Assembly (NCBI GenBank): GCA_035084275.1
Contig: CM068771.1
Coordinates: 496,001 to 560,000, forward strand
DNA length: 64,000 nucleotides
Direction of reading: 5' to 3'
Origin: Hydrolagus colliei
Lineage: Eukaryota
In this document: positions 2,957 to 64,000 of the stretch, one piece after another
Position numbering within the stretch: the first letter of the stretch is position 1
How the letters are laid out: every line of letters starts with the position of its first letter
Program-made: the position numbers and the translations under genes
Notes under the pieces: generated by a model
Databases searched by the model: none
What the model saw: only the letters and a program-made list of their open reading frames with translations
What the model was told of the DNA's origin: nothing

Positions 2957-3012
2957 TCAAGCGGGTGGGTTGGACGAGTTGTTTGATGAACTGTCCGTCC
3001 TGTCGCCATTTT
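2957..3012 (-). CDS. MHC class I heavy chain, second cytoplasmic exon (QNGDRTDSSSNNSSNPPA*)
   Basis: Acceptor catttag|AA; phase 1 continues from the previous exon; Ser-rich class I tail; TGA at 2957-2959, then G|gtaatc donor. Confidence 0.8.
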
Positions 3013-3329
3013 CTAAATGAAATAAATCATTTGTTACACAGGTTACATACTACACACACCCAGACTACAGACTATAAACACACACCCAGACTACAGACTA
3101 TAAACACACCCAGCCTACAGACTATAAACACACAGAATACAGGCTACACACAAGCAGCTAGATTACAGGCTGCATACACACACACACTCAGACTACCGGC
3201 CACACACAGACAGCAGACTAGACACGCACACACTGGTGCCAAGCCACCCACACAGACTTCATCAGTCGTCAGAAATATGTGATCAGAATAATATTTGGAT
3301 TTGTGATAAGTCAGTGAGACAGTCAGTGA

Positions 3330-3480
3330 CTGACAGTCAGAGGGGCTGGGGGAGGAGGAGGGGCTGCGGGAGGAGGAGGGGCTGTGTGTGAGGGGCTAGG
3401 GGAGGAGGGGAGGCTGGGGGGGAGGAGGGGAGGCTGGGGGGGAGGAGGGGCTGTGTGTGAGGGAATGTGTGTGAGGGAGA
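3330..3480 (+). repeat. G-rich minisatellite (gaggggctggggggaggag)n
   Basis: About 7 degenerate copies; G-tract spacing is compatible with a G-quadruplex. Confidence 0.75.
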
Positions 3481-3569
3481 GGCCTGGGTTGTCCCCCCAA
3501 GCACAGACTAAACCCTATCAGACCCACACCGACAGTGGGATCAGTGAGTATTACCGCCCTGAAGGAGGC

Positions 3570-4320
3570 AATTTCTAACAGTTTCCCAACCAGTTCCCTC
3601 CCAACTCTTTGTGTAAACTCTTGTCAATATTTATGTTTGAGGTATCCATCCAATTTGCTTTTGAAGGTTGACCCTTTTCAGGCATCCCAGACTGTGTGTT
3701 GTTACCTGTCGTATCCCCATAAACCCCTAATCCCTCTATTTTAACAAAAATTCTATCAGTCTCAGCCTTGAAAATGTTCAAGGAGTGAGCATCCACAGCC
3801 TTCTGAGTGAAGAAATGTTTCCTCAACTCTGTTCTAAAAGACTGACCCTTTACCAATTATCTTAACCCACCCACCAGTGGAAATAGTCTCTCGCTCTCTA
3901 CGCCAACAAATCACCTCCTCATTTTGAATTCCTCTATTTAAGAGCTGCGAGACGCTGCCTGGGTTGGGGGCGCTGCACAAACACAAGGATAATTATTATT
4001 ATTCTCCTGTGAAGCGTTTTAAGATGTCTCAAAGTCATGATAATGTGCTATTATTATTATATCCTTCCCAAATTGTGGTTCTCAGAATTGGACACAATAC
4101 TCCAGCTGAGGCCTAAACAGTGATTTAAAAGAGGTTAAGCAGAACTTCCTCACTGTTGTACTCTACCAACCTGTCCCGCCAACTCTAAATACCTGTTTTT
4201 CTGAACCCTCAGGTCTGTCAGCCCCTGGATCCCCTTTAAACCTATTCCATGTCTTGTACATTGCCTCTTCTCATTCATCACCCAAACCCACCTCACACTA
4301 CTCTGTATTAATCTGTACCT
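3570..4320 (-). mobile_element. Degenerate CR1 fragments with an intervening L2/SINE tail
   Basis: VKGQSFRTELRKHFFTQKAVD...LNIFKAETDR (3575-3856); further CR1-like pieces at 4060-4320; tail-like motif at 3940-4060. Confidence 0.65.
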
Positions 4321-4321
4321 G

Positions 4322-4435
4322 CGGAGCCTGGTGTGGGGGGGGACTTGGGCTCCAATGTTCTGGATGATCTGCAGCTCGTGGAGGGGAGAGTTGGGGCGGC
4401 CGACAAGGAGGGAATCTCTAGAGCTGAGCCGACAG
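4322..4435 (-). mobile_element. L2 fragment
   Basis: SLLVGRPNSPLHELQIIQNIGAQV, homologous to L2 ORF2. Confidence 0.7.
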
Positions 4436-4597: not shown

Positions 4598-4627
4598 GTT
4601 TGGCTGGGGTATAGCCAGGCTTCCCTC
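4598..4627 (-). CDS. MHC class I heavy chain, first cytoplasmic exon (xGKPGYTPAK)
   Basis: 30-bp exon, acceptor ttgcag|GA, donor C|gtgagt, phase 1-1; Tyr-x-x-Ala motif typical of class I tails. Confidence 0.8.
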
Positions 4628-4947
4628 CTGCAACTGAGAGACACAAGTCTTAGTGATGTCACTGACACACTCCCCACACACACTCCCCACATACACACAC
4701 ACACATTCCCCACCCCACACACAAACACTCCCCCCCACACACACATTCCCACCCCCCCACACACACTGCCCCCCACACACACAACATACACACTCCCCCC
4801 CCACCNNNNNNNNNNNNNNNNNNNNNNNNNNNNNNNNNNNNNNNNNNNNNNNNNNNNNNNNNNNNNNNNNNNNNNNNNNNNNNNNNNNNNNNNNNNNNNN
4901 NNNNNNNNNNNNNNNNNNNNNNNNNNNNNNNNNNNNNNNNNNNNNNN

Positions 4948-5048
4948 TTGTAAATAAAGAATCCCCCGACTGCGAGTGCGGCCAGCGCCAAAACAACAAC
5001 AACAACAGCAATAATGATGGTGGTCAGACTCCCCTCGTTTCCTCCTCC

Positions 5049-5081
<33 letters not shown>

Positions 5082-5092
5082 AGCTGGTCCAG
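4948..5092 (-). CDS. MHC class I connecting peptide and transmembrane exon (3' end lost in N gap 4806-4947)
   Basis: Acceptor ttcacag|CT in phase with the alpha3 donor; TGPAGGGRGGGGRGGGGGNEGSLTTIIIAVVVVVLALAALAVGGFFIY. Confidence 0.85.
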
Positions 5093-6271: not shown

Positions 6272-6532
6272 TGTAGACAACAGTGATGGGTGTGGTCAGG
6301 CTGCTGTGGTCCACCTCACAGGTGTAACTCTCAGCGTCTTTAAGGTTGATCTCCAGGGATTTGCGGAGCTGGAAGGTTCCGTCGCCATTTGGTAAAATCC
6401 CTGATGATTCCACGTCACTCAGAGTCTGTCTGTCTCTCAGCAGCTTCACCTCGATCGCTCGGGGATAGAAACCAGTGGCCAAACATGAGATCTTAGACCC
6501 TCTCGGAGAGGAGAGAGAGACCTCGGGGGTCA
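6272..6532 (-). CDS. MHC class I heavy chain alpha3 (Ig C1) exon
   Basis: 261-bp exon, cccacag|TG ... TACA|gtaagt, phase 1-1; ISCLATGFYP, LPNGDGTFQL, YTCEVDHSSL with both C1 cysteines. Confidence 0.93.
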
Positions 6533-6689
6533 CTGTGGGCAGATAGTCAGGGTCAGTCAGAGAGAGACATACACAGATAGAGAGAGGAAGACAGACAGAG
6601 AGAGGGAGAGAGAGAGTGAGGGACAGAGAGGGAGAGAGAGAGAGGGACAGGGCGGAGATTGGGAGAGCGACATAGAGACAGAGAGGCAG

Positions 6690-7000
6690 AGAAACAACAA
6701 CAACAAAAAGAAAATTACATTTCTAGAGCGTCTTTCACGTTGGGAGGACATCCCAAGGAGCTGAACAGTCAGATTGGGAACTGAGCAAGGGAGAGGGGCA
6801 AGGCAGGGGGGAGGGGAGGGAGAGAGTTGGGAGGGGAGGGAGAGAGTTGGGAGGGGAGGGAGAGAGTTGGGAGGGGAGGGAGAGAGTTGGGAGGGGAGGG
6901 AGAGAGTTGGGAGGGCAGCAGAAGGCAAGGTCGAAGAGGACAGTCTTGAGACTGGCCTTGAAGGTGGCGAGGGAGAGAGTGAGGCAAAGGGACTGTAGGA
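6690..7000 (-). mobile_element. L2 3' fragment with internal tandem expansion
   Basis: aaacaacaacaac tail and gagcgtctttcacgttgggaggacatcccaagg; (gggagagagttgggagggga) repeated about 5 times at 6800-6915. Confidence 0.8.
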
Positions 7001-10000
7001 TGGAGTTAGAGTCTCTCTGTCTCCCCCGTCTCTCTCTCTCTGTCTCACTGTGTCTCTCCCTCTCTATTTCTCTCCCTCACTGTCTGTCTCCCTGTTTCTC
7101 TGTCCTTCGCTCGGTTTCCCTGTGTGTGTGTGTCTCTCTCTATCTGTCTCTCTGTGTATCTCACTGTGTCTCTCCCTCTTCTCTGTCTCCCTGCCTCTCT
7201 CCCTGTGTGTGTGTGTCTCTGTCTTTGTCTCCCTGTCTCTCCCTATTTGTATCTGTCATTCTCTCGCCCCATGGGTCTCTGTCTCTCTCTCCCTGTTTGT
7301 ACCTCTCTGTCTCTCTCTCTCTCTCTCTGTCTCCCCATTTCTCTCTCTGTCTCCCCATTTCTCTCTCTGTCTCCCCATTTCTCTCTCTGTCTCTCTCTAT
7401 CTCTCAGTTGTGTGTCTCCTTCCCTCCCTGTCTCCTTCCCTCCGTCTCTGACTCCCTGCCTCTCTCTGTCTTCATCTCTCTCTCTTTCTCTGTCTCCTTG
7501 TGTGTGTGTGTCTCTCTCTCCCCATTTCTCTCTCTGTCTCTCTCTCCTTGTCTCTTTCTTTCTCTGTCTCCCTCTCTCTTTGTCTCAACATGTCTCTCTC
7601 TCTCTCATCTCCCCGTGTTTGTCACTCACTCTCCCTGTCTCTACCCTTGTCTCCCTGTGTGTGTGTCTCTCTCTCTCCCTCTCTCTGTCTGTCTTCCTGT
7701 GTGTGTGTCTCTCACTCACTCACTCTCTCTCTCTCCCAGTGTCTCTCTCTCTCCTTCTGTCCCTTTTTCCCTGCCACCCTGTTTCCCCCTCTCTCTCTCG
7801 CTATCCATCTCTCCGTGTCTCTTTATCTCTCTATGTCTCCAACTGTGTCTCCCTGCATGCGTGTGTGTGTGTGTCTCTCTCTTATCTTGCTGTCTCTCTC
7901 CCTCAGTTTCTCACTGTCTTTCTCTCTCTCTCGCTTTCTTTTTCTCCCTCTCGCTGTCTCTCTCTCTGTGTGTGTGTTTCTCTCTCCCTGCCTCTCTCTC
8001 TCTCCCTCTCTCTGTCTCATGGTCTCTCTCCCCACCCCCTCTCTCTTCCCTCTCTCTCTGTCTCCCTCTCACAGTCTCTCGGTCTCCCTCTCACTCCCTC
8101 TCTCTCCTTCTCCCTNNNNNNNNNNNNNNNNNNNNNNNNNNNNNNNNNNNNNNNNNNNNNNNNNNNNNNNNNNNNNNNNNNNNNNNNNNNNNNNNNNNNN
8201 NNNNNNNNNNNNNNNNNNNNNNNNNNNNNNNNNNNNNNNNNNNNNNGTCTCTCTCTCCTTGTCTCTATGGTCTCTCTCCCACTGTCTCTCCTTGTCTCCC
8301 TGTGTTAGTCTCTCTCTCTGCCGCTCACTTTCTCTCTGTCTCTCGCTGTTTCTTTCTCTCTCTCTGTCTTTCTGTGTGTATTTGTTTGTGTGTGTCTCTC
8401 TCGCTGTTTCTGTCTCTGTCTCCCTACGTCTCTCCACCCAACTCTCTCTTTTTCTTTCTCTCCCCCTCTCACTGTCTCTCAGTTTCTCTCTCTTGCTGTC
8501 TCTCTCTCTGATTCCCTGTGTGTCTCTCGCTCTCTGTCTCAGACTCCTTGTCTCTCTATCTGACTGTGTCGCTCTCTCTCTCCCTGTGTCTCACACTCTC
8601 TGTCTCTCTCTCTCTCTCGCTGTCTCTCTCTGTCTTCCTGTGTGTGTATCTCTCTCAGTCTCCTCATCTCTCTCTGTCTAATCTCTCTCTGTCTTACTCT
8701 CCCTCTCTGTGTGTGTGTGTCTCTCTCCGTCTCTCTCTCTCGCTATCCTTTTGCTATCTCTCTCACTATCCCTATATGTCTCTCTCTCGTCTCTCTCTCT
8801 CACTCGCCTTCTCACTGTCTCTCTCTATTGCTGTGTCTCTCTCTCTCCTCACCATCTCTCTCTATCGCTGTGTGTATCTCTCTGTGTCTCCAGGTCTCTC
8901 TCTCTTTCTCTCTCTATCTTGCGGTCTCTCTCCCCCCTCTCATTGTCTCTCCCTCTCACTGTCTCTCCCTCTCTTTCTCTCTCTCTGTGTCTCTCTACCT
9001 CTCTCTCACTGTCTCTTTCTCTCCCTCTCTCTTCCTGTCTCTCTCTCTTTCAATCTCCTTATCTCTTTCTCGTCTCCCCTGCGAGTGGTTTACGCTGGCT
9101 CCATCTCTCTCTCTCTGTCCCCCTGACTCTCTCTTTCTCTCTCCCTCTCACTGTCTCTCTCTCTACCACTGTGTGTGTCTCTCTGTCTTTCTCTTCCTTT
9201 CTGTCTCATTACATATCTCTCTCTCTCCTCCCGTCTCTCTCTCTCTCTAGCTGTCTCTCTCACTCTTTCTCTCGCTCTTGCTCTCCTTTTGTTGTTTCTC
9301 TCACTGTCTCTCTCTCTCTCGCTGTCTCTCTCTATCTCTCTCTCTCTCGCTGTCTCTCTCTCGCTCGCTGTCTCTCTCTCTCTCTTTCTCACTGTCTCTC
9401 TCTTTCTCACTGTCTCTCTCTTTCTCACTGTCCCTCTCTTTCTCTCATACTGTCTCTCATACTGTCTCTCTCTCGCTGTCTCCTTCTCTCACTGTCTCTC
9501 TCTCTCACTGTCTCTCTCAGTGTCTCTCTCTCTCTCTCACTGTCTCTCTCTCTCTCTCACTCTCTCTTTCACTGTCCCTCTCTTTCTCACTGTCCCTCTC
9601 TTTCTCACTGTCTCTCTCTTTCTCTCATACTGTCTCTCTCTCTCTCGCTGTCTCTTTCTCACTATCTCTCACTGTCTCCTTCTCACTATCTCTCTCACTG
9701 TCTGTATCTCTCTTCACTGTTTCTTTCTCTCACACTGTCTCTCTCTCTCTTTCTCTCGCTGTCTCTCTCTCTCTCTCTCAGTGTCTCTCTCCCTCTCTCT
9801 CACTGTCTCTCTTTTTCTCACTGTCTCTCTCGCGGTCTCTCTCTTTCTCGTTGTCTCCCTCTCGCTGTTTCTCTTTCTCACTGGAATGCGTTGCCTGAAA
9901 AGGTGTGGAGGCCGATTCGATAACAACTTTTAAAAGAGAGATAGACATTTATTTGGGGAGGACGGGTTTGCGAGATTATGGGGGAGAGAGAGAGCTGGGG

Positions 10001-10200
10001 AGTGGGATTAAATTGGTCTTCTAGGCACAGGACTCGATGGGCCGAATGGCCTCCTTTTGTGCCATAAGATTCTATGATTGACTCTATATCTCTATTGCTT
10101 TCTCTATCACTGTCTCTCTCTCATTGTCTTGCTACGTCTCTCTCACTATCTCTCTCTCCCTTGGTGTCTCTCTCTCTTGCTGTTTCTGTGTGTGTGTCTG
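7000..10200. repeat. (CT)/(CTGT)-rich low-complexity region (contains N gap 8116-8246)
   Basis: Degenerate CT microsatellite, almost purely pyrimidine with TG interruptions on +. Confidence 0.9.
9882..10085 (+). mobile_element. CR1 3' end
   Basis: ggaatgcgttgcctgaaaaggtgtggaggc ... tcgatgggccgaatggcctccttttgtgccataagattctatgatt (ATTCTATG-type tail). Confidence 0.8.
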
Positions 10201-10227
10201 ACGGACAGAGGGAGATAGATTTAGATA

Positions 10228-11672
10228 GAGAGAGAGTGTGTGGAGGGGGAGAGCAGAGAGAGAGAGTGTGTGGAGGGGGAGAGCAGAGAGAGAGTGGAGG
10301 GGGAGAGAGAGAGTGTGTGGAGGGGGAGAGCAGAGAGAGAGAGTGTGGAGGGGGAGAGCAGAGAGAGAGTGTGTGGAGGGGGGAGAGCAGAGAGAGAGTG
10401 TGTGAAGGGGGAGAGCAGAGAGAGAGTGTGAAGGGGGAGAGCAGAGAGAGAGTGTGGAGGGGGAGAGCAGAGAGAGTGTGGAGGGGGAGAGCAGAGAGAG
10501 AGAGTGAGGGGGAGAGCAGAGAGAGAGTGTGGAGGGAGAGAGCAGAGAGAGAGTGTGGAGGAGGAGAGCAGAGAGAGTGTGGAGGGGGAGAGCAGAGAGA
10601 GAGTGTGGAGGGGGAGAGAGAGAGTGTGTGGAGGGGGAGAGCAGAGAGAGTGTGGAGGGGAGAGCAGAGAGAGAGAGTGGAGGGGGAGAGCAGAGAGAGA
10701 GTGTGGAGGGAGAGAGCAGAGAGAGAGTGTGGAGGAGGAGAGCAGAGAGAGTGTGGAGGGGGAGAGCAGAGAGAGAGTCTGGATGGGGAGAGCAGAGAGA
10801 GTGTGTGGAGGGGCAGAGCAGAGAGAGAGAGAGTGGACGGGGGAGAGAGAGTGTGTGGAGGGGGAGAGCAGAGAGAGAGTGTGGAGGGGGAGAGCAGAGA
10901 GAGCGTGTGGAGGGGGAGAGCAGAGAGAGAGAGAGAGAGAGAGAGAGTGTGGAGGGGGAGAGCAGAGAGAGAGTGTGGAGGGGGGAGAGCAGAGAGAGAG
11001 TGGAGGGGGAGAGCAGAGAGAGAGAGTGGAGGGGGAGAGCAGAGAGAGAGTGTGGAGGGGGAGAGCAGAGAGAGTGTGGAGGGGGAGAGCAGAGAGAGAG
11101 TGTGGAGGGGGAGAGCAGAGAGAGTGTGTGGAGGGGGAGAGCAGAGAGAGTGTGTGGAGGGGGAGAGCAGAGAGAGAGTGTGGAGGGGGAGAGCAGAGAG
11201 AGAGTGTGGAGGGGGAGAGCAGAGAGAGGTGTGTGGAGGGGGAGAGCAGAGAGAGTGTGGAGGGGGGAGAGCAGAGAGAGAGTGTGGAGGGGGAGAGCAG
11301 AGAGAGAGTGTGGAGGGGGAGAGCAGAGAGAGAGTGTGGAGGGGGAGAGCAGAGAGAGAGTGTGGAGGGGGAGAGCAGAGAGAGTGTGGAGGGGGGAGAA
11401 CAGAGAGAGAGAGAGAGAGAGAGAGAGTGGATGGGGAGAGCAGAGAGAGAGTGGAGGGGGAGAGGCAGAGAGAGTGTGGAGGGGGAGAGTAGAGAGAGAG
11501 TGTGGAGGGGGAGAGCAGAGAGAGAGTGTGGAGGGGGAGAGCAGAGAGAGAGTGTGGAGGGGGAGAGCAGAGAGAGAGTGTGGAGGGGGAGAGCAGAGAG
11601 AGAGTGTGGAGGGGGAGAGCAGAGAGAGTGTGTGGAGGGGGAGAGCAGAGAGAGCGTATGGAGGGGGAGAGC

Positions 11673-11706
<34 letters not shown>

Positions 11707-12522
11707 TGTGGAGGGGGAGAGCAGAGAGAGTGTGGAGGGGGAGAGCAGAGAGAGAGTGTGGAGGGGAGAGCAGAGAGAGAGTGTGGAGGGGGAGAGCAGA
11801 GAGAGTGTGGAGGGGGAGAGCAGAGAGAGAGTGTGGAGGGGGAGAGCAGAGAGAGTGTGGAGGGTAGAGCAGAGAGAGAGTGTGGAGGGGGGAGAGCAGA
11901 GAGAGCATGTGGAGGGGGAGAGCAGAGAGAGCGTGTGGAGGGGGAGAGCAGAGAGAGTGTGTGGAGGGGGAGAGCAGAGAGAGAGAGAGTGTGGAGGGGG
12001 ACATCAGAGAGAGAGAGAGAGTGTGGAGGGGAGAGCAGAGAGAGAGTGTGGAGGGGGGAGAGCAGAGAGAGAGTGGAGGGGGAGAGCAGAGAGAGAGTGT
12101 GGAGGGGGAGAGCAGAGAGAGTGTGGAGGGGGGAGAGCAGAGAGAGAGTGTGGAGGGGGAGAGCAGAGAGAGTGTGTGGAGGGGGAGAGCAGAGAGAGAG
12201 TGTGGAGGGGGAGAGCAGAGAGAGAGTGTGGAGGGGGGAGAGCAGAGAGAGTGTGGCGGGGGAGAGCAGAGAGAGAGAGTGTGTCGGGGGAGAACAGAGA
12301 GAGAGTGTGGAGGGGGAGAGCAGAGAGAGTGTGTGGAGGGGGAGAGCAGAGAGAGTGTGTGGAGGGGGAGAGAGAGAGAGTGTGGAGGGGGAGAGCAGAG
12401 AGAGAGTGTGGAGGGGGAGAGCAGAGAGAGTGTGGGGGGGGAGAGCAGAGAGAGAGCGTGGAGGGGGAGAGCAGAGAGAGAGTGTGGAGGGGGAGAGCAG
12501 AGAGAGAGTGTGGAGGGGGAGA

Positions 12523-12566
<44 letters not shown>

Positions 12567-13594
12567 GGGGGAGAGCAGAGAGAGTGTGGAGGGGGAGAGC
12601 AGAGAGAGAGTGGAGGGGGAGAGCAGAGAGAGAGTGTGGAGGGGGGAGAGCAGAGAGAGTGTGTGGAGGGGGAGAGCAGAGAGAGTGTGGAGGGGGGAGA
12701 GCAGAGAGAGAGTGTGGAGGGGGAGAGCAGAGAGAGAGTGTGGAGGGGGAGAGCAGAGAGAGAGAGTGGAGGGGGGAGAGCAGAGAGAGAGTGTGGAGGG
12801 GGAGAGCAGAGAGAGAGAGTGGAGGGGGAGAGCAGAGAGAGAGAGTGGAGGGGGAGAGCAGAGAGAGAGTGTGGAGGGGGAGAGCAGAGAGAGAGAGTGG
12901 AGGGGGGGAGCAGAGAGAGAGTGTGGAGGGGGGAGAGCAGAGAGAGAGTGTGGAGGGGGAGAGCAGAGAGAGAGTGTGGAGGGGGAGAGCAGAGAGAGTG
13001 TGGAGGGGGAGAGGAGAGAGAGAGTGTGGAGGGGGAGAGCAGAGAGAGAGTGTGGAGGGGGAGAGCAGAGAGAGAGTGTGGAGGGGGAGAGCAGAGAGAG
13101 AGTGTGGAGGGGGGAGAGCAGAGAGAGAGTGTGGAGGGGGAGAGCAGAGAGAGTGTGGAGGGGGAGAACAGAGGGAGAGAGAAAGAGAGAGAGAGTGGAT
13201 GGGGAGAGCAGAGAGAGAGTGGAGGGGGAGAGCAGAGAGAGTGTGGAGGGGGAGAGTAGAGAGAGAGTGTGGAGGGGGAGAGCAGAGAGAGAGTGTGGAG
13301 GGGAGAGCAGAGAGAGAGTGTGGAGGGGGAGAGCAGAGAGAGTGTGTGGAGGGGGAGAGCACAGAGAGAGTGTGGAGGGGGAGAGCAGAGAGAGAGTGTG
13401 GAGGGGGAGAGCAGAGAGAGAGTGTGGAGGGGGAGAGCAGAGAGAGAGTGTGGAGGGGGAGAGCAGAGAGAGAGAGTGTGGAGGGGGAGAGCAGAGAGAG
13501 TGTGGAGGGGGAGAGCAGAGAGAGAGAGAGTGGAGGGGGAGAGAGAGAGTGTGTGGGAGGGGGAGAGCAGAGAGAGCGTATGGAGGGGGAGAGC

Positions 13595-13628
<34 letters not shown>

Positions 13629-16600
13629 TGTGGAGGGGGAGAGCAGAGAGAGTGTGGAGGGGGAGAGCAGAGAGAGAGTGGAGGGGGAGAGCAGAGAGAG
13701 AGTGTGGAAGGGGAGAGCAGAGAGAGTGTGGAGGGGGAGAGCAGAGAGAGTGTGGAGGGGGAGAGCAGAGAGAGTGTGTGGAGGGGGAGAGCAGAGAGAG
13801 TGTGGAGGGGGAGAGCAGAGAGAGTGTGGAGGGGGAGAGCAGAGAGAGAGTGGAGGGGGAGAGGAGAGAGAGAGAGAGAGAGTGGAGGGGGAGAGAGAGA
13901 GAGTGTGGAGGGGGAGAGCAGAGAGAGTGTGGAGGGGGACAGCAGAGAGAGAGTGTGGAGGGGGAGAGCAGAGAGAGAGTGTGGAGCGGGAGAGAGAGAG
14001 TGGAGGTGGAGAGCAGAGAGAGTGTGGAGGGGGAGAGCAGAGAGAGTATGGAGGGGGAGAGCAGAGAGAGTGTGGAGGGGGAGAGCAGAGAGAGAGTGTG
14101 TAGGGGGAGAGCAGAGAGAGAGTGTGGAGGGGAGAGCAGGGAGAGAGTGTGGAGGGGGAGAGCAGAGAGAGAGTGGAGGGGGAGAGCAGAGAGAGAGTGT
14201 GGAGGGGGAGAGCAGAGAGAGAGTGTGGAGGTGGAGAGAGAGAGAGTGTGGAGGGGGAGAGCAGAGAGAGAGTGTGGAGGGGGAGAGAGAGAGTGGAGTT
14301 GGAGAGCAGAGAGAGTGTGGAGGGGGAGAGCAGAGAGAGAGTGGAGGGGGAGAGCAGAGAGAGTGTGGAGGGGGAGAGCAGAGAGAGAGAGTGTGGAGGG
14401 GGAGAGCAGAGAGAGAGTGTGGAGGGGGAGAGCAGAGAGAGAGTGTGGAGGGGGAGAGCAGAGAGAGAGTGTGGAGGGGGAGAGCAGAGAGAGAGAGAGT
14501 GTGGAGGGGGAGAGCAGAGAGAGAGTGTGGAGGGGGAGAGAGAGAGAGTGTGGAGGGGGAGAGCAGAGAGAGAGAGAGCGTGGAGGGGGGAGAGCAGAGA
14601 GAGAGTGGAGGGGGAGAGCAGAGAGAGAGTGTGGAGGCGGAGAGCAGAGAGAGAGTGTGGAGGGGGAGAGCAGAGAGAGAGTGTGGAGGGGGAGAGCAGA
14701 GAGAGAGTGTGGAGGGGGAGAGCAGAGAGAGAGAGAGTGGAGGGGGAGAGCAGAGAGAGTGTGGAGGGGGAGAGCAGAGAGAGAGAGTGGAGAGGGAGAG
14801 CAGAGAGAGAGAGTGTGGAGGGGAGAGCAGAGAGAGAGGGAAAGTGTGGAGGGGGAGAGCAGAGAGAGAGAGAAAGTGTGGAGGGGGAGAGCAGAGAGTG
14901 TGTGGAGGGGGAGAGAGAGTGTGGAGGGGGAGAGAGAGTGTGGAGGGGGAGAGCAGAGAGAGTGTGGAGGGGGAGAGCAGAGAGAGTGGAGGGGGAGAGT
15001 AGAGAGAGAGTGTGGAGGGGGAGAGCAGAGAGAGAGTGTGGAGGGGGAGAGCAGAGAGAGAGTGTGGAGGGGGAGAGCAGAGAGAGAGAGTGGAGGGGGA
15101 GAGCAGAGAGTGTGTGGAGGGGGAGAGAGAGTGTGGAGGGGAGAGCAGAGAGAGTGTGTGGAGGGGGAGAGCAGAGAGAGAGTGTGGAGGGGGAGAGCAG
15201 AGAGAGAGTGTGGAGGGGAGAGAGAGAGAGTGTGGAGGGGGAGAGCAGAGAGAGAGAGAGTGGAGGGGGAGAGCAGAGAGACAGAGAGAGTGTGGAGGGG
15301 GAGAGCAGAGAGAGAGAGTGGAGAGGGAGAGCAGAGAGAGAGTGTGGAGGGGAGAGCAGAGAGAGAGAGAGAAGTGTGGAGGGGGAGAGCAGAGAGAGAG
15401 AGAAAGTGTGGAGGGGGAGAGCAGAGAGAGAGAAAGTGTGGAGGGGGAGAGCAGAGAGAGAGAAAGTGTGGAGGGGGAGAGCAGAGAGTGTGTGGAGGAG
15501 GAGAGAGAGTGTGGGAGGGGGGAGAGCAGAGAGAGTGTGGAGTAGGAGAGCAGAGAGAGAGTGTGGAGGGGGAGATCAGAGAGAGAGAGAGTGTGGAGGG
15601 GGAGAGCAGAGAGAGAGTGTGGAGGGGGAGAGAGAGAGAGTGTGGAGGGGGAGAGCAGAGGAGAGAGAGTGTGGAGGGGGAGAGCAGAGAGAGAGTGTGG
15701 AGGGGGAGAGCAGAGAGAGAGTGTGGAGGGGGAGAGCAGAGAGAGAGTGTGGAGGGGGAGAGCAGAGAGAGAGTGTGGAGGGGGAGAGCAGAGAGAGAGA
15801 GAGTGTGGAGGGGGAGAGCAGAGAGAGAGTGTGGAGGGGGAGAGAGAGAGAGTGTGGAGGGGGAGAGCAGAGAGAGTGTGGAGGGGGAGAGCAGAGAGAG
15901 AGAGAGTGTGGAGGGGGAGAGCAGAGAGAGAGTGGAGGGGGAGAGCAGAGAGAGAGTGTGGAGGCGGAGAGCAGAGAGAGAGTGTGGAGGGGGAGAGCAG
16001 AGAGAGAGTGTGGAGGGGGAGAGCAGAGAGAGAGAGAGTGGAGGGGGAGAGCAGAGAGAGTGTGGAGGGGGAGAGCAGAGAGAGAGAGTGGAGAGGAGAG
16101 CAGAGAGAGAGAGTGTGGAGGGGAGAGCAGAGAGAGAGGGAAAGTGTGGAGGGGGGAGAGCAGAGAGAGAGAGAAAGTGTGGAGGGGGAGAGCAGAGAGA
16201 GAGAAAGTGTGGAGGGGGAGAGCAGAGAGAGAGAAAGTGTGGAGGGGGAGAGCAGAGAGTGTGTGGAGGGGGAGAGAGAGTGTGGAGGGGGAGAGAGAGT
16301 GTGGAGGGGGAGAGCAGAGAGAGTGTGGAGGGGGGAGAGCAGAGAGAGTGGAGGGGGAGAGTAGAGAGAGAGTGTGGAGGGGGGAGAGCAGAGAGAGAGT
16401 GTGGAGGGGGAGAGCAGAGAGAGAGTGTGGAGGGGGAGAGCAGAGAGAGAGAGTGGAGCGGGAGAGCAGAGAGTGTGTGGAGGGGGGAGAGAGAGTGTGG
16501 AGGGGAGAGCAGAGAGAGTGTGTGGAGGGGGAGAGCAGAGAGAGAGTGGTGGAGGGGGAGAGCAGAGAGAGAGTGTGGAGGGGGAGAGCAGAGAGAGAGT

Positions 16601-18349: not shown

Positions 18350-18383
<34 letters not shown>

Positions 18384-19862: not shown

Positions 19863-19906
<44 letters not shown>

Positions 19907-20119
19907 GGGGGAGAGCAGAGAGAGTGTGGAGGGGGAGAGCAGAGAGAGAGAGTGTGGAGGGGGAGAGGAGAGAGAGAGTGTGGAGGGGGAGAGCAGAGAG
20001 AGAGTGTGGAGGGGGAGAGCAGAGAGAGAGTGTGGAGGGGGAGAGCAGAGAGAGAGTGTGGAGGGGGAGAGCAGAGAGAGAGTGTGGAGGGGGAGAGCAG
20101 AGAGAGTGTGGAGGGGGAG

Positions 20120-20156
<37 letters not shown>

Positions 20157-20710: not shown

Positions 20711-20746
<36 letters not shown>

Positions 20747-21649: not shown

Positions 21650-21683
<34 letters not shown>

Positions 21684-47896: not shown

Positions 47897-48801
47897 CTAC
47901 ACATGGTTATGTTGGTGGCTCAGAAAGCGAGTGATGGGGTAAATGAAGATGGATTTCAGGCTCTGCCTGAATTGGGTCTGGGTCACACCATAGATGACAG
48001 TGTTGGAGCAGGAGCTGAGGAACTGCAGCATGTAACCCACGTGCTCAGCGATGGTGAAAGGGCTGCTGTAGTCAGACTGTAGGAGTTTGGCCTCTGTCAT
48101 CAGTGCACACATGAAGGTAACCATGTAGGTCAACCACAGCAACACAAAGGTCCCCGAGATGGTAATGAGCAGGATTAGAGATTTCTTCCGACTCTCCATC
48201 TCCTCGTCCTTCAACGTCACTGATCCCCGCAGACGCTGACGCACAGCGCTGGCCACGAGAACCTGTCTGATGGTCAGAGAGTTGAAGAGGAGAATGACGA
48301 TGAAGGGAAGAATCGGATTTACAATCATATTCATCAAGTTAAATATCCTCCAGCCAATATCAATATAACAGTTGGGCTTGACGCTGCAAAACCAGGGCTG
48401 CCCATTGATCATCATCAGCGGTTGGTAGATAAAATAAATGGGGATATTTTTTGCGCTTAAAAATGCACAGATTGTCCAGATCACCAGGCCCGCTGTCGTC
48501 TCGGTGCAGTATTTGGGTTTGAGCTTTGGGCGGCAGATGGCAATGAAGCGGTCAAAGGTGAAGGCCATGGTCAGCCAGACAGAAGTATCAATTACGAAGA
48601 AGCGCAGCACAAGGTGTACATGGCACACGGGGGTCTGGAACAAAACAAAGTACGGCAGGTGGAGCTGAAATGTCTTCCTCAGGATCACACCAATGAATAT
48701 GACCAGCAGGTCAGCAACAGCCATAGCGACCAGGTAGCGGGTGACACATTTGGAGAGTCCACACTTTCCCTGGGCCAGGACCACAATGGTCACCGCGATC
48801 G
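47897..48801 (-). CDS. GPR139-like class A GPCR copy B, exon 2 (intact; 322 aa with exon 1)
   Basis: Acceptor ttgctgcag|CG in phase 1; DRF and NTVIY motifs; 64+905 nt = 323 codons. Confidence 0.9.
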
Positions 48802-51085
48802 CTGCAGCAATGTTACAAACACAATCATAGATTTCACTAACTTATTCATGATTGTGCCTGGCAGCAAACCCTTATAAGATTCCATGATTTTGCTGAGTGC
48901 ATATAAGTTCGATCATGTATTTAAAACAGATGCATTTCACAGAGTAGTCAGAGAAAGTTACATAGACATTCACAGCACAGATGGCCATTCAGCCCATTGT
49001 ACCTGTGCCAAATATTCTGTTAAGCGAAATGCCAGTACGTATTGTGGATGTAGAAGCAGTAATTCCACAAATGAATGTCCCAATAAATACCATATATCCA
49101 TTTATCAATAGATTTTTTAGAAGGATTGTTATCTCTGGAAAGAAAGTGACAAATTGACTAACCTTGCACCTGCAATTTATTGCAATGTATAAAGAGCATG
49201 ATGTGTAAGGAAACACAGCGAAGCCATTGCCCTGCACGCAAATCAAACCAGGCAATTTCGCTTCCAAGTGAGCTTTGTATCTATCTTTACTCTCTGTCCA
49301 TCGCTAGATTCCTCTCGGTTTGCTCAGAAATGCCATGACCACAATTCCCTCTGCTTACGCTTTGGATTGTCTCATCGAGCCTCACCCAGTCTGAATGCGT
49401 GTGGGCTGACAATGCCCCACTGATTGCTCATCTCCGAGTCTCGGCTTGAGCGTGTGCCTGCTGGAACTGACCCAACCCTTAACATTATTTATCCTCTCCT
49501 ATTCCATACACTTTCTTGATCGAACTCAAGTCAATGTCTCCTCCAACTTTTGCATCTTCTCAACCCTCCTGTACTCAGAGCAGCCCTATGTTCCTTCCCT
49601 GGAGTCCTGCACTCAACATATTTTGTCAAAGGCTGCTGGCTTTCCATCAGCAGCCACCATGGAAACCCCATCCTCAGTTTCCTCCACTTTCTTCTCTGAC
49701 AGCTCTACCCTCCTGTCCTACTTCTGCTGCTCTGAACTCCTCATAATCTTGGGTGACTTTAACCATAACTATCTTGCATTCAGTCATGCATGACACACTA
49801 GTCGCTGTCAACCTCCACATCACTACTTACTGATATATGTAACCCTGGTATAGGAGACAACTCCACTCCCTCAAATCCCAGGTGCTCTCTGTATACTGTC
49901 CCTTTTCAAACCTTCTTTGTCTGTGCTAATTCATGGACTGTGTTGTTGCTTCCCAACTTTGCCTTTGCTCTCCCAACTTCAGCCCACAACCCCTTCAAAT
50001 TTGGGTTTTGTATTGTTGTAACATAGACTCAGCCCTGGTCAAGGTAAATAAATTAACAATCTGTCGAATTACGACCATGGCATGTCTCTGTCTCAACATC
50101 CTTCTCAACCTGCGAGTTGCTTTCCATAACATTGACCACTATATTTTTCTACACGCACCAATTCTGACCAGTGTCTGCCTGCCTGCGAGACTGACTGCCT
50201 ACCTGCCTAGGAAATTTGGATCACACATGGAAGACCTGGGATTAATTCACGGAAACGCAAATTCTAGGGCAGTTTACTTCATCCACAACCCTGTAATAAT
50301 GTCCCTGGAAGAAACAGAATAGATTGGTCAGTTCAAACCACTAATGGAAGTATTAATGGAAAACTGCTGTGTGCAATTCAATGCCATGTTTTGCCCACCA
50401 TACAAGCAGTGAATTCACTTCACAGTATATATTGTGAAGCACTTCGAGTCATCTAGAAGGCAGCAAAATTGCTTTGACAAATGCAACTATTTGTATTATT
50501 ATTGTATATACCGTCAAACAAATCGATCATCCACTAGTTCTCCAACATATTCAACTTGAAGTCCTTTCCAATTAACAAATTCCCTCTGGATCATTCATTC
50601 TGGTAATGAGTATTATGAGATACAAATAAAAATAGTAGTAATCCTTGCATTCATCAAAATATATCAAAGTGCTTCACATAATACATTGTAAAGTTAATTA
50701 AGTGTGTACTTTCATGGGAAACTCAGCAGCCAATTGATATAGAAGTGACGTATACAAATTTATAGATTGAGTGAAGAAATTCTTTGTGTTTTGTTGTTTT
50801 TCAAGGAAAGATTCTAACCATAAAGCGATTCACCAGTCCAATAACAAATGGGTTTCTTCCAACCGAAGTTCCAAAGAGAGGTGTGAGGAGTGAGGAAAAA
50901 TTCTCAATATTTTGCCTTGACTGGGAATCGAGCCCAGGTCCTCCACTTTCGAGGAGTGCTCTAACCGCAAAGCTACATGACTCAACAACCTGTTTCTGCA
51001 CCACTCATTCTAAATACTCCTTTCTCTGTTTGAAAAGTAATTCAATGTGGAACGTCAGATTACCTCCATTCTCCCTATCTTACCA

Positions 51086-60194: not shown

Positions 60195-60965
60195 ATAATA
60201 ATATTAATAATGATAATGGTAATAATGATAATGATAATGGTAATAATGATAATGATAATGATAATAATGATCCTTAAATTTGAAATAGCACTTTTCAGAT
60301 CTTCTAGACATCTCAGAAAGCCTCACAGGATATATTGCAAGTGAAGTGACTATATTTGTTGCCTAAACATGGCAGCCAATTGCGCTCAGCAGTGTCCAGC
60401 AAACAGTCATGGATTGAATTGACCAATTTCATTGTGCTTTTTTTTGGGAGGGATTATCATTTCCAAATTTGTGCAAGATTATGCAACCAATAACCATGTT
60501 CAAATCATTGCTAATTTAAAAATATCATGTATAAAGTATTGATATAAAGAAATAAGAAGCATCTTAAGAGAATTATCAGAAATGTTGAAGCCATAAAATG
60601 ACCAATAATGTAATGCATTTGATAGTTTTTCTCTCTTTTTTAAAATCATTTCATCTTTAAACAATAATGAATACAATAGTAATCCTTAAATTTGATAATA
60701 CACTTTTCACATCTTCTAGGCATCCCAAGTTATTTCGCAGTTCATATTGTTAACTACAAATTTTGCGCGCGAATCATAGCAGCCAGCAGTTTCTCACAAA
60801 CTGTCATGAATCCATGTATCTAGTTTATTGTTGTTGTTTTTTTCTTCAGGAATTACTAACAGGTATTTAGAGCAAGAAAACTTTCCAAGGAGTTGTCCTG
60901 CTGGAAATTGGCTGAACTTCTCGATTATTAGTTTAAAGCTCTTAACACTGAGCTACAGGACTTCA
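60195..60965 (-). mobile_element. Two degenerate tRNA-SINE copies; the first has an expanded (ATAATG)n tail
   Basis: Tails at 60270 and 60680; head gtcctgtagctcagtgttaagagc at about 60960. Confidence 0.6.
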
Positions 60966-61384
60966 ACCATTGAACTCCCAACAACTGAGGATTCCAACCA
61001 CTGATCTGTAGCTAATTGCAAAGAAAATTTCGATTGAGAAAATATCTTGACAAATAATACGCAATAAATAAATTTCAAGACAATTAGCCAGACATTGAGC
61101 ATATACAAATTAGAAAATTAAACCAATGAACAAAAATGAACTCTAAATTGATATGGTGTGCACGGTGAGTTTCTGAACTCACTATATTGTATGTAACAAA
61201 TGATCGAATAAATATATTGGGGAGACAAAGAGTTACAGAATGTGGTTGTAGACATACTGCATTTTATTGACTGATTGACTGCCCTAAATATTCTTTCTAA
61301 AGTACCATACGAACAGTCATAATACTATTCACTTAATGGTAGTCCCCGAGAGAGATAAAAGATGTAGAGAGGAAGAAAGATAAA

Positions 61385-61640
61385 AACCTGGCAAAACAGG
61401 CCAGCTAGTCTAACGTCAGTGGTAAGGAAATCTGTAGAGACTATCATCCGGAACATGATAAATTTTCACTTGGATAATTATGGGTTAAAACAGCACATCC
61501 AACAGCCATGGGTTTGCTAATGTCAAATTATGTCTAGCAAACAAGATAGAGTTTTATGGATGATGTAGCAGAGACGGTGGATGAAGGTAGAGCAGTTGAT
61601 GTCATTTCTATGGCTTTCCCAAAACGCATTTGATCAAGTG
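61385..61640 (+). mobile_element. Old CR1 RT fragment
   Basis: Degenerate RPxSLTSVVxK...HGF...AVDVI...AFDQVP. Confidence 0.6.
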
Positions 61641-62314
61641 CCTCTTCTACACAACAACTAGAAACAGACAATATTAAATGAAATCAAATGTAAAGATAAT
61701 AGATAAAATTTGGGGTTAATGTATGACCATTAGTTGCTATTGCTCATGTATCATATTATTCTACCCAACTCAATCACCTACCTTCCCTGAAAAAGTATCT
61801 CCAAGTTGCGTTCGAGTCATCTGACTATCTCGGAATCTGGGATTCATCTACAATGATACAAACTCCTCCATCGCTCTCCCCAACAACTCTCTGCTCACTC
61901 CTCACAGTGACTTTTTTCAACACACTCTCCAAACTGCTTGACCTCACTAAAGGTAACATAGTACACCAGCTACCTACTCTCATTCAAAATACAGGCACGT
62001 GCCACCTGGCTCCAATGTAAATTAATGGTAGATCTGGCTGTACATCATCAAAGACACCCACTCCCTTAAATCCTGCTTCAACTCCAACACAATATGGAAT
62101 ACTAAGGACAAGACCAGGATCTTTTACGTTACCATCTAGCTTCCCTGTCTACTCTTTCATGCCTCGCCCACTCGCTAATAAAAACAACCAGAAAGAAATA
62201 ATGATTTCTTGGACACCCAAAACAACGAATAGCTTAACTGCCTTTGCACTTCAAAACACCTAGATTCAAGCCCATTGCGCCCTCACACATGGGGCCGTAT
62301 CCATTCGTCACCAT

Positions 62315-62640
62315 GGAGCTCCTGTGGCTCAGTGGTTAGAGCACTCATCTTACAATTGTAACACCTGTGTTCGAATCCAGGCATCTCAACGCGAAACCTA
62401 AGGCAAGTTTCCTTGCTCCTAATCCCTAATAATACTCCCACCAAAAAAATACAATGTTAAAATTGATCATGTTATTCCACCATTTGTTTAACACTACTGT
62501 GCGCAATTGGTTATTGTGTTTTGCACACAAACACAGTCAATTCACTTTACAGTATTTCTATGCAGCGCTTTAAGACCTCTTCCCAAAGAAGACGTAAAAA
62601 GTACTACAACAAACTCAAGGATTATTATATTATATTATCT
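62315..62640 (+). mobile_element. tRNA-derived SINE
   Basis: A box tggctcagtgg (62325-62335), B box gttcgaatcc (62369-62378), L2-like tail ending (ATT)n. Confidence 0.8.
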
Positions 62641-63299
62641 TCATAGATTAAAATTCCTCTCTCACCAATATTACAACACACATGGAACAACCATCTCCTC
62701 AGTCAACCCCTTCTTATCCGCTGCCATCTAGTCACAAAACAACACGAACATCACCCTGACCAATGCTCTGCTCTAATTAGGCTTCCCTGTGCCAACTCCG
62801 TTCTTATTGGTCATTGTAACTCTCATCTCTGCAAGACGCAGATTATACAGTATTCTGCAATTTGTGTGTTTTGCCACTTGAAGCTCTGTGACCCAATTAG
62901 CTCCAACCTCTCCTGCCTCCACTGCCTCCCATCTCCCACTGGATCTGTTAAATTACAAAACGTTGTTCCCAGGCTTTGGAACGTGCTGTAATTAAAAAGT
63001 TTAATTTCAGCATCCTATGGATCCTTTTTCTTAATTGTACAGTACATAAAACCTCAGATTGCTCAGATGTCTTAAGCTTTATTGAACATCAAAGATCTGC
63101 ATTGAGCGAAAGATATCTAACTTCACAAACTGGTTGTCAAACAATACCAGACATTTTCAAACAGCTTTTTATTCAGTGTAAAAGTTATTGTTTCAAAGAG
63201 ATACCGGGCCATTTAATAACCATCTAAGATAGCGCAGACCTGTGTGTGTGTGTAATGTTGTGTAGACCAACGAGAGCAGCCCAGCTAAACATGGTTGTG

Positions 63300-64000
63300 T
63301 TAATGTCCCTGTAAGCGAGTGATGGGATAAATGAAGATGGATTTCAGTCGCTGCCTGAATTGGGTCTGAGTCACACCATAGATGACGGTGTTGGAGCAGG
63401 AGCTGAGGTACTGCAGCATGTAACCCACGTGCTCAGCGATGGTGAAAGGGCTGCTGTAGTCAAACTGCATCAGTTTGGCCTCTGTGCTCCTTGCATAACA
63501 GAAGGTGACGAAGTAGGTGAGCCACAGCAACACAAATGTCCCCGAGATGGTAAAGAGCAGGATAATGGATTTCTTTCGACTCTCCATCTCCTTGTCCGTC
63601 CCCTTCACTGATCCACGCAGATGCTGACGCACAACGCTGGCCACTAGAACATGCCTGATGGTCAGAGAGTTGAAGAGGAGGATGACGATGAAGGGAAGAA
63701 TCGGATTTACAATCATATGAATAACGTAAAACGCCTTCCAGCCAATAGCAGATCTATAGCTGGGCTTGATGCTGCAGAACCAGGGGTGTCCATTGATCAT
63801 CATCAGCGGTTGGAACATAAAATAAAAGGGGATATTTTTTGCGCTTAAAAATGCACAGATTGTCCAGATCACCAGTCCCGCTATCCTCTCAGTGCAGTAT
63901 TGGGGTTTGAGCTTTGGGCAGCAGATGGCAATGAAGCGGTCAAAGGTGAAGGCCATGGTCAGCCAGACAGAGGTTTCCATGATGACCAGGCGCAGTGGAA
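63300..64000 (-). CDS. GPR139-like class A GPCR copy C, exon 2 (partial; continues beyond the window)
   Basis: Open from the window edge (PLRLVIMETSVW...DRF...NTVIY) to TAA; paralogous to A and B. Confidence 0.88.
   Translation of the reverse strand, partial: PLRLVIMETSVWLTMAFTFDRFIAICCPKLKPQYCTERIAGLVIWTICAFLSAKNIPFYFMFQPLMMINGHPWFCSIKPSYRSAIGWKAFYVIHMIVNPILPFIVILLFNSLTIRHVLVASVVRQHLRGSVKGTDKEMESRKKSIILLFTISGTFVLLWLTYFVTFCYARSTEAKLMQFDYSSPFTIAEHVGYMLQYLSSCSNTVIYGVTQTQFRQRLKSIFIYPITRLQGH

What the first reader, a model, noticed from the sequence alone, without database searches (positions are those of the whole stretch)
2957..64000. MHC class I gene placed next to a diversifying GPCR cluster
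Seen: a class I gene and at least four GPCR copies lie within 64 kb. Established: mammalian extended MHC regions carry olfactory-receptor clusters, and mouse class Ib M10 proteins are co-expressed with V2R receptors. Inference: this may be an analogous or ancestral MHC-linked receptor cluster in a cartilaginous fish; I do not know of a description of it. Caveat: the two halves are separated by a 200-N join, so the linkage may be an assembly artefact.
Basis: inference. Interest (0 to 1): 0.7.

Follow-up and report, generated by a model that had tools for sequence, protein, structure and literature searches.

The report
Partial class I gene beside GPCR array
The window holds the rear half of a chimaera-type MHC class I gene joined, across a long satellite and an unread gap, to three young copies of an orphan receptor gene; the same receptor family sits inside the sawfish MHC, so the neighbourhood is probably real, but nothing shows that the genes work together.

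Summary
On the minus strand lie four class I exons with correct splice sites and phases: alpha-3, connecting peptide/TM, and two cytoplasmic exons ending in a stop at 2957. They are closest to Callorhinchus milii class I (alpha-3 74-75% identical, tail nearly identical). No leader, alpha-1 or alpha-2 exon exists anywhere in the read letters. There are three GPCR copies, not four or more: one intact, one without a usable start codon, one cut by the window end, plus a 69-bp relic. They are young local duplicates (dS 0.13-0.20, dN/dS about 0.6) of a large, dispersed chondrichthyan family that is called "GPR139" by automatic annotation only. Between the two halves lie 3.7 kb of TC repeats, a 20.5-kb satellite and the 200-N join. 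The flanks of that join share nothing, so the window cannot prove linkage. Outside evidence supports regional synteny. A published supplementary table for sawfish chromosome 34 places ten genes of this family between MHC class Ib genes, and the paper's text does not mention them. In horn shark, family members share the MHC chromosome. Functional coupling is untested. Interest is moderate.

The parts
2957..3012 (-). Last coding exon of the class I gene (QNGDRTDSSSNNSSNPPA, then TGA stop at 2957-2959)
   Evidence: tblastn against C. milii class I P0291/P0292 gives 13/15 and 12/12 identical residues. The acceptor is tttag, with phase 1 carried over from the previous exon.
4598..4627 (-). 30-bp cytoplasmic exon of the class I gene (GGKPGYTPAK)
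   Evidence: 10/10 residues are identical to C. milii class I. The acceptor is ttgcag and the donor gtgagt, phase 1-1.
4806..4947 (.). N gap that removes the 3' end of the TM exon, its donor site and part of the following intron
   Evidence: The TM exon reads ...GGFFIY straight into the Ns, whereas C. milii continues YLYKKK. The flanks share no 12-mer.
4948..5092 (-). Connecting-peptide/transmembrane exon of the class I gene, with an in-frame Gly-rich (GGA-repeat) expansion; truncated by the gap
   Evidence: The acceptor is ttcacag. The translation is GPAGGGRGGGGRGGGGGNEGSLTTIIIAVVVVVLALAALAVGGFFIY, which aligns to the C. milii TM region.
6272..6532 (-). Alpha-3 (C1-set Ig) exon of the class I gene
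   Evidence: Pfam C1-set 2e-14. PDB 6LUP shark class I alpha-3, E 5e-19. 74-75% identity to C. milii class I. AG/GT splice sites, 261 bp, phase 1-1.
6533..10228 (.). TC-rich simple repeats with N gap 8116-8246, where intron 3 and the alpha-2 exon would be expected; no class I exon is present
   Evidence: Tandem repeat arrays 7012-8106 and 8309-9879. The gap flanks share 29 12-mers. No alpha-1/alpha-2 hit.
10229..30715 (+). 20.5-kb satellite of a 26-bp unit (AGAGAGAGAGTGTGGAGGGGGAGAGC), about 787 copies
   Evidence: TRF score 26266, 85% matches. The 527 units with 3 or fewer mismatches all lie inside the array, with none elsewhere in the window.
30718..30917 (.). 200-N join separating the class I half of the window from the GPCR half
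   Evidence: The flanks share no 12-mer on either strand, and the repeat types differ on the two sides.
30918..33900 (.). Simple-repeat block (54-mer, 16/17-mer and 24-28-mer arrays) with three N runs inside one array
   Evidence: TRF. The flanks of gaps 31739-31871, 31890-32065 and 33701-33839 share the same repeat.
39075..40052 (+). GPCR copy 1: intact 325-aa ORF; the start supported by homology is the Met at 39132
   Evidence: Pfam 7tm_1 1.3e-23. 68-71% identity to C. milii 'probable GPR139' proteins. The family motifs FDRF and NTVIY and the TM3/ECL2 cysteines are kept.
43424..43492 (+). 69-bp relic of the TM7/C-terminal part of a fourth GPCR copy
   Evidence: tblastn: residues 294-316 of copy 1, 78% identity, E 3e-5.
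47897..48889 (-). GPCR copy 2: 83% amino-acid identity to copy 1; probable pseudogene, or a copy that needs another start
   Evidence: Two in-frame stops lie upstream of TM1, and Ile stands where copy 1 and C. milii P0008 have the start Met. The first in-frame ATG lies in TM2.
63300..64000 (-). GPCR copy 3: open from TM3 to the stop, 5' part beyond the window end
   Evidence: 81% identity to copy 1 over 231 aa. Pfam 7tm_1 1.1e-17.

Best explanation
This is a repeat-rich piece of a holocephalan (chimaera-lineage) genome.

SHOWN. The well-preserved 3' half of a class I gene (alpha-3, TM, two cytoplasmic exons) is scaffolded about 32.6 kb from a young local array of three orphan class-A GPCR genes. 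Two of the three are in inverted orientation relative to the first. The GPCRs belong to the large chondrichthyan family that automatic annotation calls 'GPR139'. The array arose by recent local duplication of units of at least 1.8 kb. Its members evolve under relaxed constraint, and amino-acid changes are concentrated in segments I take, from class-A topology and without modelling, to face the extracellular side. One copy already looks dead.

INFERRED.
- The 5' exons of the class I gene lie in unread sequence, most likely at the 200-N join.
- The neighbourhood reflects real regional synteny between MHC class I genes and this GPCR family.
- That synteny is a by-product of birth-and-death duplication in a duplication-prone region, not a functional partnership.
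For: - Exon map with intact splice sites and phases, and near-identity of the tail to C. milii class I.
- Alpha-3 is class I-like.
- Three GPCR copies and one relic. dS is 0.13-0.20 and dN/dS 0.58-0.66, and similarity extends about 590 bp upstream and 220 bp downstream of the ORF.
- The three window copies are monophyletic, inside a holocephalan clade with C. milii.
- In the sawfish MHC table, ten family members lie between MHC-Ib genes and three lie beside C4/TRIM39.
- In horn shark, a GPCR at 39.45 Mb and a class I-like gene at 40.36 Mb lie on one chromosome, which carries 14 of about 45 top hits.
- The C. milii paralogue sits 7 kb from a RING-B30.2 TRIM gene, as family members do in the sawfish MHC.
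Against: - Nothing in the window ties the two sides of the 200-N join together.
- The class I gene lacks its peptide-binding exons in the read sequence, so it may be a truncated fragment.
- The GPCR family is dispersed over many chromosomes, so some proximity to class I genes could arise by chance.
- The horn-shark distance (0.9 Mb) is loose.
- Elasmobranch and holocephalan copies are separate clades, so common ancestry of the linked clusters is not shown.
Confidence: 0.55

Rival explanations
1. Assembly artefact. The contig carrying the class I exons and satellite (1-30717) and the GPCR contig (from 30918) were joined wrongly or in the wrong order, so the 64-kb adjacency does not exist in the animal.
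For: The flanks of the 200-N run share no 12-mer, and the satellite stops at the gap. The join falls exactly where the missing alpha-1/alpha-2 exons should be. Long satellites are typical contig ends and are hard to scaffold (established knowledge).
Against: The same GPCR family lies within the sawfish MHC class Ib region and on the horn-shark MHC chromosome. Linkage at some scale is therefore plausible even if the exact distance is wrong.
Confidence: 0.2
2. Functional MHC-receptor unit. The class I gene and the GPCR array are kept together because they act together, for example through co-expression in chemosensory neurons as with mouse M10 and V2R, or as with MHC-linked odorant receptors proposed to serve mate choice.
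For: Linkage recurs in a batoid, a shark and, if the join is right, a holocephalan. GPCR changes are concentrated in segments taken to face the extracellular side (pN/pS 0.92 against 0.50 elsewhere), as in chemoreceptors, although those regions were chosen post hoc.
Against: There are no expression data. The receptors are class-A orphans, not V2Rs, and hit no OR profile. Most family members in other species are on non-MHC chromosomes. One of the three copies here is probably dead. The class I tail and alpha-3 are those of an ordinary C. milii-type class I, not a special lineage.
Confidence: 0.07
3. The class I piece is a truncated pseudogene fragment left by a partial duplication or by satellite insertion, not part of a working gene. 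This is compatible with either real or false linkage.
For: No leader, alpha-1 or alpha-2 appears in 64 kb, although alpha-3 is 75% identical to the query proteins, so those exons would be easy to detect. Upstream of alpha-3 there are only simple repeats and a 20.5-kb satellite. Class I fragments are common in MHC regions (established knowledge).
Against: All four exons present are open, with canonical splice sites, matching phases and a conserved tail. Two gaps of unknown true size (8116-8246 and 30718-30917) lie where the 5' exons should be.
Confidence: 0.3

Closest known systems
Callorhinchus milii MHC class I (UniProt V9KZ04 'non-classical' and V9L0X9)
   Same: The alpha-3 domain is 74-75% identical. 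The TM region aligns. The cytoplasmic exons GGKPGYTPAK and DSSSNNSSNPPA are identical or nearly so. Exon phases are the same.
   Different: The alpha-1/alpha-2 exons are not present in the read sequence, so classical versus non-classical cannot be judged. There is a 13-residue Gly-rich expansion in the connecting peptide.
Sawfish (Pristis pectinata) chromosome 34 MHC class Ib region, supplementary file 3 of Verissimo et al. 2023 (PMC10751288)
   Same: Genes of the same automatically named 'probable GPR139' family are clustered next to class I genes. The nearest gap from an MHC-Ib gene to a family member is 89 kb.
   Different: The species belongs to a different subclass (batoid). Orthology of the clusters is unresolved because holocephalan and elasmobranch copies form separate clades. 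The paper does not discuss these genes.
MHC-linked olfactory receptor clusters of mammals (extended MHC)
   Same: A tandemly duplicating class-A GPCR cluster lies near class I genes (established knowledge for mammals; assembled order here).
   Different: The window's receptors hit only the general 7tm_1 profile, and their nearest solved relatives are neurotensin receptor and GPR139 at E about 1e-9. Olfactory expression is unknown.
Mouse M10/M1 class Ib proteins with V2R vomeronasal receptors
   Same: Only the idea of a class I molecule paired with a chemosensory GPCR.
   Different: V2Rs are class-C receptors with large extracellular domains, whereas these are short class-A receptors with almost no N-terminus. 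To my knowledge the M10 genes lie in the mouse MHC and the V2R genes elsewhere, so that pairing rests on co-expression, not linkage (established knowledge). No co-expression data exist here.
Human GPR139 (PDB 7VUG)
   Same: Class-A 7TM fold, and the name given by annotation pipelines.
   Different: E 1.9e-9 with partial coverage, no better than neurotensin receptor 1 at 3.9e-10. The family has hundreds of members per genome rather than one.

Membership tests
MHC class I heavy chain | Membrane-proximal C1-set Ig (alpha-3) domain with the conserved cysteine pair | tested here: met
   Pfam C1-set 2e-14. Full-length alignment to shark class I alpha-3 in 6LUP. The motifs SCLATGFYP and YTCEVDH are present.
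MHC class I heavy chain | Alpha-1/alpha-2 peptide-binding superdomain (Pfam MHC_I) | tested here: not met
   No hit in the read letters of the window with 23 class I proteins, or with the two closest C. milii proteins at E up to 50. These exons may lie in unread gaps, which I did not fill.
MHC class I heavy chain | Separate TM and short cytoplasmic exons, all phase 1, ending in a short tail | tested here: met
   Exons 5092-4948, 4627-4598 and 3012-2957 have AG/GT splice sites and phase continuity.
MHC class I heavy chain | Association with beta-2-microglobulin and peptide presentation | not testable with these tools
   This needs the full protein and biochemistry.
GPR139 orthologue | Closer to GPR139 than to other class-A receptors | tested here: not met
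   PDB search: neurotensin receptor 1 at 3.9e-10, GPR139 at 1.9e-9, 5-HT2A at 3.9e-9. The name comes from annotation pipelines.
Rhodopsin-class (class A) GPCR | Seven-TM profile with DRY-like and NPxxY-like motifs | tested here: met
   Pfam 7tm_1 at 84 bits, covering profile positions 6-260. FDRF and NTVIY are conserved across the family.
MHC-linked olfactory receptor cluster | Receptors belong to the odorant receptor family | tested here: not met
   Only the general 7tm_1 profile is hit, with no OR profile at E up to 0.01. All named homologues are 'GPR139' or other non-OR names.
MHC-linked olfactory receptor cluster | Physical linkage to MHC class I genes | tested here: inconclusive
   The assembled distance is 32.6 kb, but it crosses a 200-N join with no shared sequence. 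Linkage of the family to the MHC is seen in sawfish and horn shark.
MHC-linked olfactory receptor cluster | Expression in olfactory or vomeronasal neurons | not testable with these tools
   No expression data are at hand. The catshark sensory atlas does not mention this family.
M10-V2R type partnership | Class-C V2R receptor co-expressed with a dedicated class Ib lineage | tested here: not met
   The receptors are about 306-aa class-A proteins without a large N-terminal domain. The class I tail and alpha-3 resemble ordinary C. milii class I. Co-expression is not testable.

The most novel reading that the evidence does not exclude
A linkage between MHC class I genes and a fast-evolving orphan class-A GPCR family goes back to the common ancestor of chimaeras, sharks and rays. 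That would make it a counterpart in cartilaginous fish, built from a different receptor family, of the MHC-odorant-receptor linkage of tetrapods. It may mark this undescribed family as chemosensory or as recognising immune-related ligands.
Probability: 0.25. Interest if true: 0.75.

Novelty: new variant of a known kind. Interest (0 to 1): 0.42.

Why it matters
MHC-linked receptor clusters are an old puzzle in tetrapods, tied to ideas about mate choice, kin recognition and the origin of the extended MHC. If cartilaginous fish also keep a rapidly duplicating GPCR family next to class I genes, and it is a different family, then one of two things follows. Either the MHC neighbourhood is generally permissive for receptor birth-and-death, or a receptor-MHC association predates bony vertebrates. 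The published account calls holocephalans a 'data-deficient taxon' for MHC organisation (PMC10751288), so even one reliable chimaera locus would add information. Separately, the GPCR family itself is large (1294 homologues at E up to 1e-10), and I found no paper about it in the library searched.

Tried and rejected
1. I searched for the alpha-1/alpha-2/leader exons with 23 class I proteins and, permissively, with the two closest C. milii proteins (E up to 50, word size 2, no filter). Only weak matches broken by stops or lying in low-complexity sequence turned up, so I rejected them.

2. I considered that the C1-set exon could be class II or beta-2-microglobulin. I rejected this. The best full-length matches are class I alpha-3, the CLATGFYP motif is present, and a class I-type TM and tail follow.

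3. I looked for other genes in the window.
- No TRIM B30.2 match with the C. milii neighbour gene.
- No tRNA genes.
- The remaining ORFs are transposon fragments.

4. I tried to place C. milii class I genes on the scaffold that carries the closest GPCR (MU249860.1). Only transcript-derived C. milii class I proteins are in the collection, so no contig information was available. Horn-shark P0233 was not on record.

5. I tested for gene conversion between copies 1 and 2. The longest identical run is 82 nt, which is only mildly unusual, so I did not pursue it.

6. Literature searches for a description of the GPR139-like expansion in cartilaginous fish found nothing relevant.

7. I did not read or infer any letters for the N runs.

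Full report
**What the window is**

The 64-kb window is vertebrate DNA: CpG observed/expected is 0.25 and GC is 51%. It contains six N runs. About a third of it (10229-30715) is one satellite with a 26-bp unit, and several other simple-repeat arrays surround the N runs. Most remaining open frames are transposon debris:
- repeated 3' fragments of a non-LTR element;
- a decayed gypsy-like pol region (protease, RT, integrase) at about 52.7-55.9 kb.

No tRNA genes are present.

**Gaps, tested first**

- Gaps 8116-8246, 31739-31871, 31890-32065 and 33701-33839 each have the same tandem repeat on both sides (29, 6, 7 and 21 shared 12-mers). They look like holes inside arrays.
- Gap 4806-4947 has unrelated flanks. 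On its right side the class I TM exon runs straight into the Ns.
- The 200-N run at 30718-30917 has no shared 12-mer on either strand. All 527 satellite units with 3 or fewer mismatches lie to its left.

The window therefore gives no evidence that its two halves are contiguous. I did not fill or look up any N.

**The class I gene**

On the minus strand, 6272-6532 is a 261-bp exon with an AG acceptor, a GTAAGT donor and phase 1 at both ends.
- It matches Pfam C1-set at 2e-14.
- Its best solved relative is the alpha-3 domain of nurse-shark class I (6LUP, residues 182-267, E 5e-19).
- A whole-library HMMER search found about 50-58% identity to class I proteins of sharks, coelacanth, gar and cyprinids.
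- A length-padded search scoring only the 86 residues of this exon found two Callorhinchus milii class I proteins at 74-75% identity.

Using those two proteins as probes, I mapped the rest of the 3' half:
- the connecting-peptide/TM exon from 5092 to the gap edge at 4948, carrying an in-frame Gly-rich expansion;
- a 30-bp cytoplasmic exon at 4598-4627 (GGKPGYTPAK, 10/10 identical);
- the last exon at 2957-3012 (QNGDRTDSSSNNSSNPPA, then stop).

All have canonical splice sites and consistent phase. The finding's start coordinate, 2957, is the last base of the stop codon.

The leader, alpha-1 and alpha-2 exons are absent. Neither 23 full-length class I proteins nor the two close C. milii proteins at E up to 50 give a credible match anywhere else in the window. 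With alpha-3 at 75% identity, these exons would be easy to see. Upstream of alpha-3 lie only 3.7 kb of TC-rich repeats with a gap, the 20.5-kb satellite, the 200-N join, 3 kb more of simple repeats, and transposon fragments. Either the 5' exons are in unread sequence, or this is a truncated copy. Because the peptide-binding domain is missing, classical versus non-classical status cannot be judged.

**The GPCRs**

tblastn with the intact ORF finds three copies and one relic.

- Copy 1 (39075-40052, +) is open for 325 codons and hits Pfam 7tm_1 at 1.3e-23. Alignment with relatives puts the likely start at the Met at 39132 and shows the family motifs intact.
- Copy 2 (47897-48889, -) is 83% identical in protein. 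It has Ile where the start Met should be, two stops upstream, and no other ATG before TM2. It is probably dead, or it needs an upstream exon.
- Copy 3 (63300 to beyond 64000, -) is open but cut by the window end.
- The fourth 'copy' is a 23-codon relic at 43424-43492.

| Pair (codons compared) | dS | dN/dS |
|---|---|---|
| Copy 1 vs copy 2 (codons 21-325) | 0.134 | 0.60 |
| Copy 1 vs copy 3 (shared 232 codons) | 0.160 | 0.66 |
| Copy 2 vs copy 3 (shared 232 codons) | 0.195 | 0.62 |

Nucleotide similarity extends about 590 bp upstream and 220 bp downstream of the ORF. Variable residues cluster in three stretches (residues 88-102, 165-200 and 252-285). From class-A topology I take these to be the top of TM3, ECL2 with the top of TM5, and the top of TM6 with ECL3; no structure was modelled. 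For the latter two stretches, pN/pS is 0.92 against 0.50 elsewhere. I chose those regions after seeing the alignment, so this is a hint and not a test. 'Diversifying' is fair only in the sense of young, fast-evolving duplicates.

**What family the GPCRs belong to**

The best hits are C. milii proteins at 68-71% identity. All elasmobranch hits are at 53% or below. [quoted passage not shown]

Against solved structures, human GPR139 (1.9e-9) scores no better than neurotensin receptor 1 (3.9e-10). The name is therefore a label, not evidence of orthology.

In a tree, the three window copies are monophyletic (support 99). They sit inside a holocephalan clade with C. milii (support 100), separate from all elasmobranch copies (support 100). 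The holocephalan clade shares a four-residue deletion in TM1 and has almost no N-terminal tail.

I found no paper describing this family in cartilaginous fish.

**Is the linkage real and meaningful?**

The window cannot say. Outside evidence helps in part.

- Sawfish. The supplementary gene table for chromosome 34 in Verissimo et al. 2023 (PMC10751288) lists MHC-Ib genes at 13.17-13.29 Mb, then ten 'probable GPR139' genes at 13.38-13.68 Mb, then U1 and TRIM39-like genes, then four more MHC-Ib genes at 13.96-14.22 Mb. Three further family members lie beside TRIM39-like and C4 genes at 10.09-11.85 Mb. The main text never mentions them.
- Horn shark. Class I genes lie on a 74.47-Mb chromosome that also carries 14 of about 45 horn-shark proteins among the top GPCR hits. 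One GPCR gene at 39.45 Mb is 0.9 Mb from a class I-like gene at 40.36 Mb. Others lie at 22.9 and 34.0 Mb.
- C. milii. The closest paralogue sits 7 kb from a RING-B30.2 TRIM gene, a pairing also seen in the sawfish MHC.

Against a special relationship:
- The horn-shark hits are spread over at least 19 contigs or chromosomes.
- In Mobula, Mustelus, Amblyraja, Stegostoma and Scyliorhinus torazame, the best GPCR hits lie on different records from the class I genes.
- Orthology between holocephalan and elasmobranch clusters cannot be resolved.

**Verdict**

The interpretation as an MHC-linked receptor cluster has real comparative support at the level of regional synteny. That support was sitting unremarked in a published supplementary table. 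The functional analogy to OR or M10-V2R systems is untested and fails the family-membership tests.

The most likely account is co-location in a duplication-prone, repeat-rich MHC neighbourhood. I rate it a new variant of a known kind, of moderate interest. The more novel reading is an ancestral chondrichthyan linkage to an undescribed receptor family, which I hold at about one in four.

Noticed in passing
window 39075-40052, 47897-48889, 63300-64000; proteins P0001-P0120: The GPCR family that pipelines call 'probable GPR139' is very large in cartilaginous fish. 1294 homologues pass E 1e-10, and the horn-shark hits lie on at least 19 contigs. It is no closer to human GPR139 than to neurotensin receptor. 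I found no paper describing it.
   Followed up: partly
window 39132-39200 (TM1 of copy 1) and C. milii P0001, P0008: Holocephalan members share a four-residue deletion in TM1 relative to all elasmobranch members. They begin only about 10 residues before TM1, so they have practically no extracellular N-terminus.
   Followed up: partly
window 10229-30715: A 20.5-kb satellite of a 26-bp purine-rich unit, about 787 copies at 85% match. It is confined to this one array within the window and ends exactly at the 200-N join.
   Followed up: partly
window 5165-6199, 7012-9879 versus 10229-30715: The repeats in the class I introns and upstream of alpha-3 are C/T-rich on the + strand, while the related-looking satellite is A/G-rich on the + strand. 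The polarity of the purine-rich repeats therefore flips near 9.9-10.2 kb, where a transposon fragment sits. This could be a real inversion or a sign of misassembly.
   Followed up: no
window 5020-5085 (-): An in-frame GGA/GGN microsatellite adds about 13 glycine/arginine residues to the class I connecting peptide relative to C. milii class I.
   Followed up: no
window 52700-55900 (+): A decayed gypsy-like LTR retrotransposon pol region, broken into several frames: a protease DTGA motif, RT (Pfam RVT_1), the integrase zinc-binding domain and the integrase core.
   Followed up: partly
window 3-290, 826-1752, 34348-35172, 37324-37689, 38084-38446, 40665-41174, 46263-46793, 56476-57105: At least eight fragments of one repeated ORF (motif ...LDYGNSLL...LQVIQNSAARVL...). 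It has no Pfam hit and is presumably the 3' part of a non-LTR retrotransposon. The same repeats occur in the C. milii locus L001 at 74-87% nucleotide identity.
   Followed up: partly
tree; horn-shark P0106 and P0114: With midpoint rooting, the earliest-branching elasmobranch lineage of the GPCR family is a pair of genes on the horn-shark MHC chromosome. This would fit an MHC-linked founder gene, but the root is not established.
   Followed up: no
L001 (C. milii MU249860.1, 3.19 Mb): The C. milii GPCR closest to the window's copies lies 7 kb from a RING-B30.2 (TRIM) gene. The same pairing of TRIM39-like and GPR139-like genes recurs in the sawfish MHC table.
   Followed up: partly
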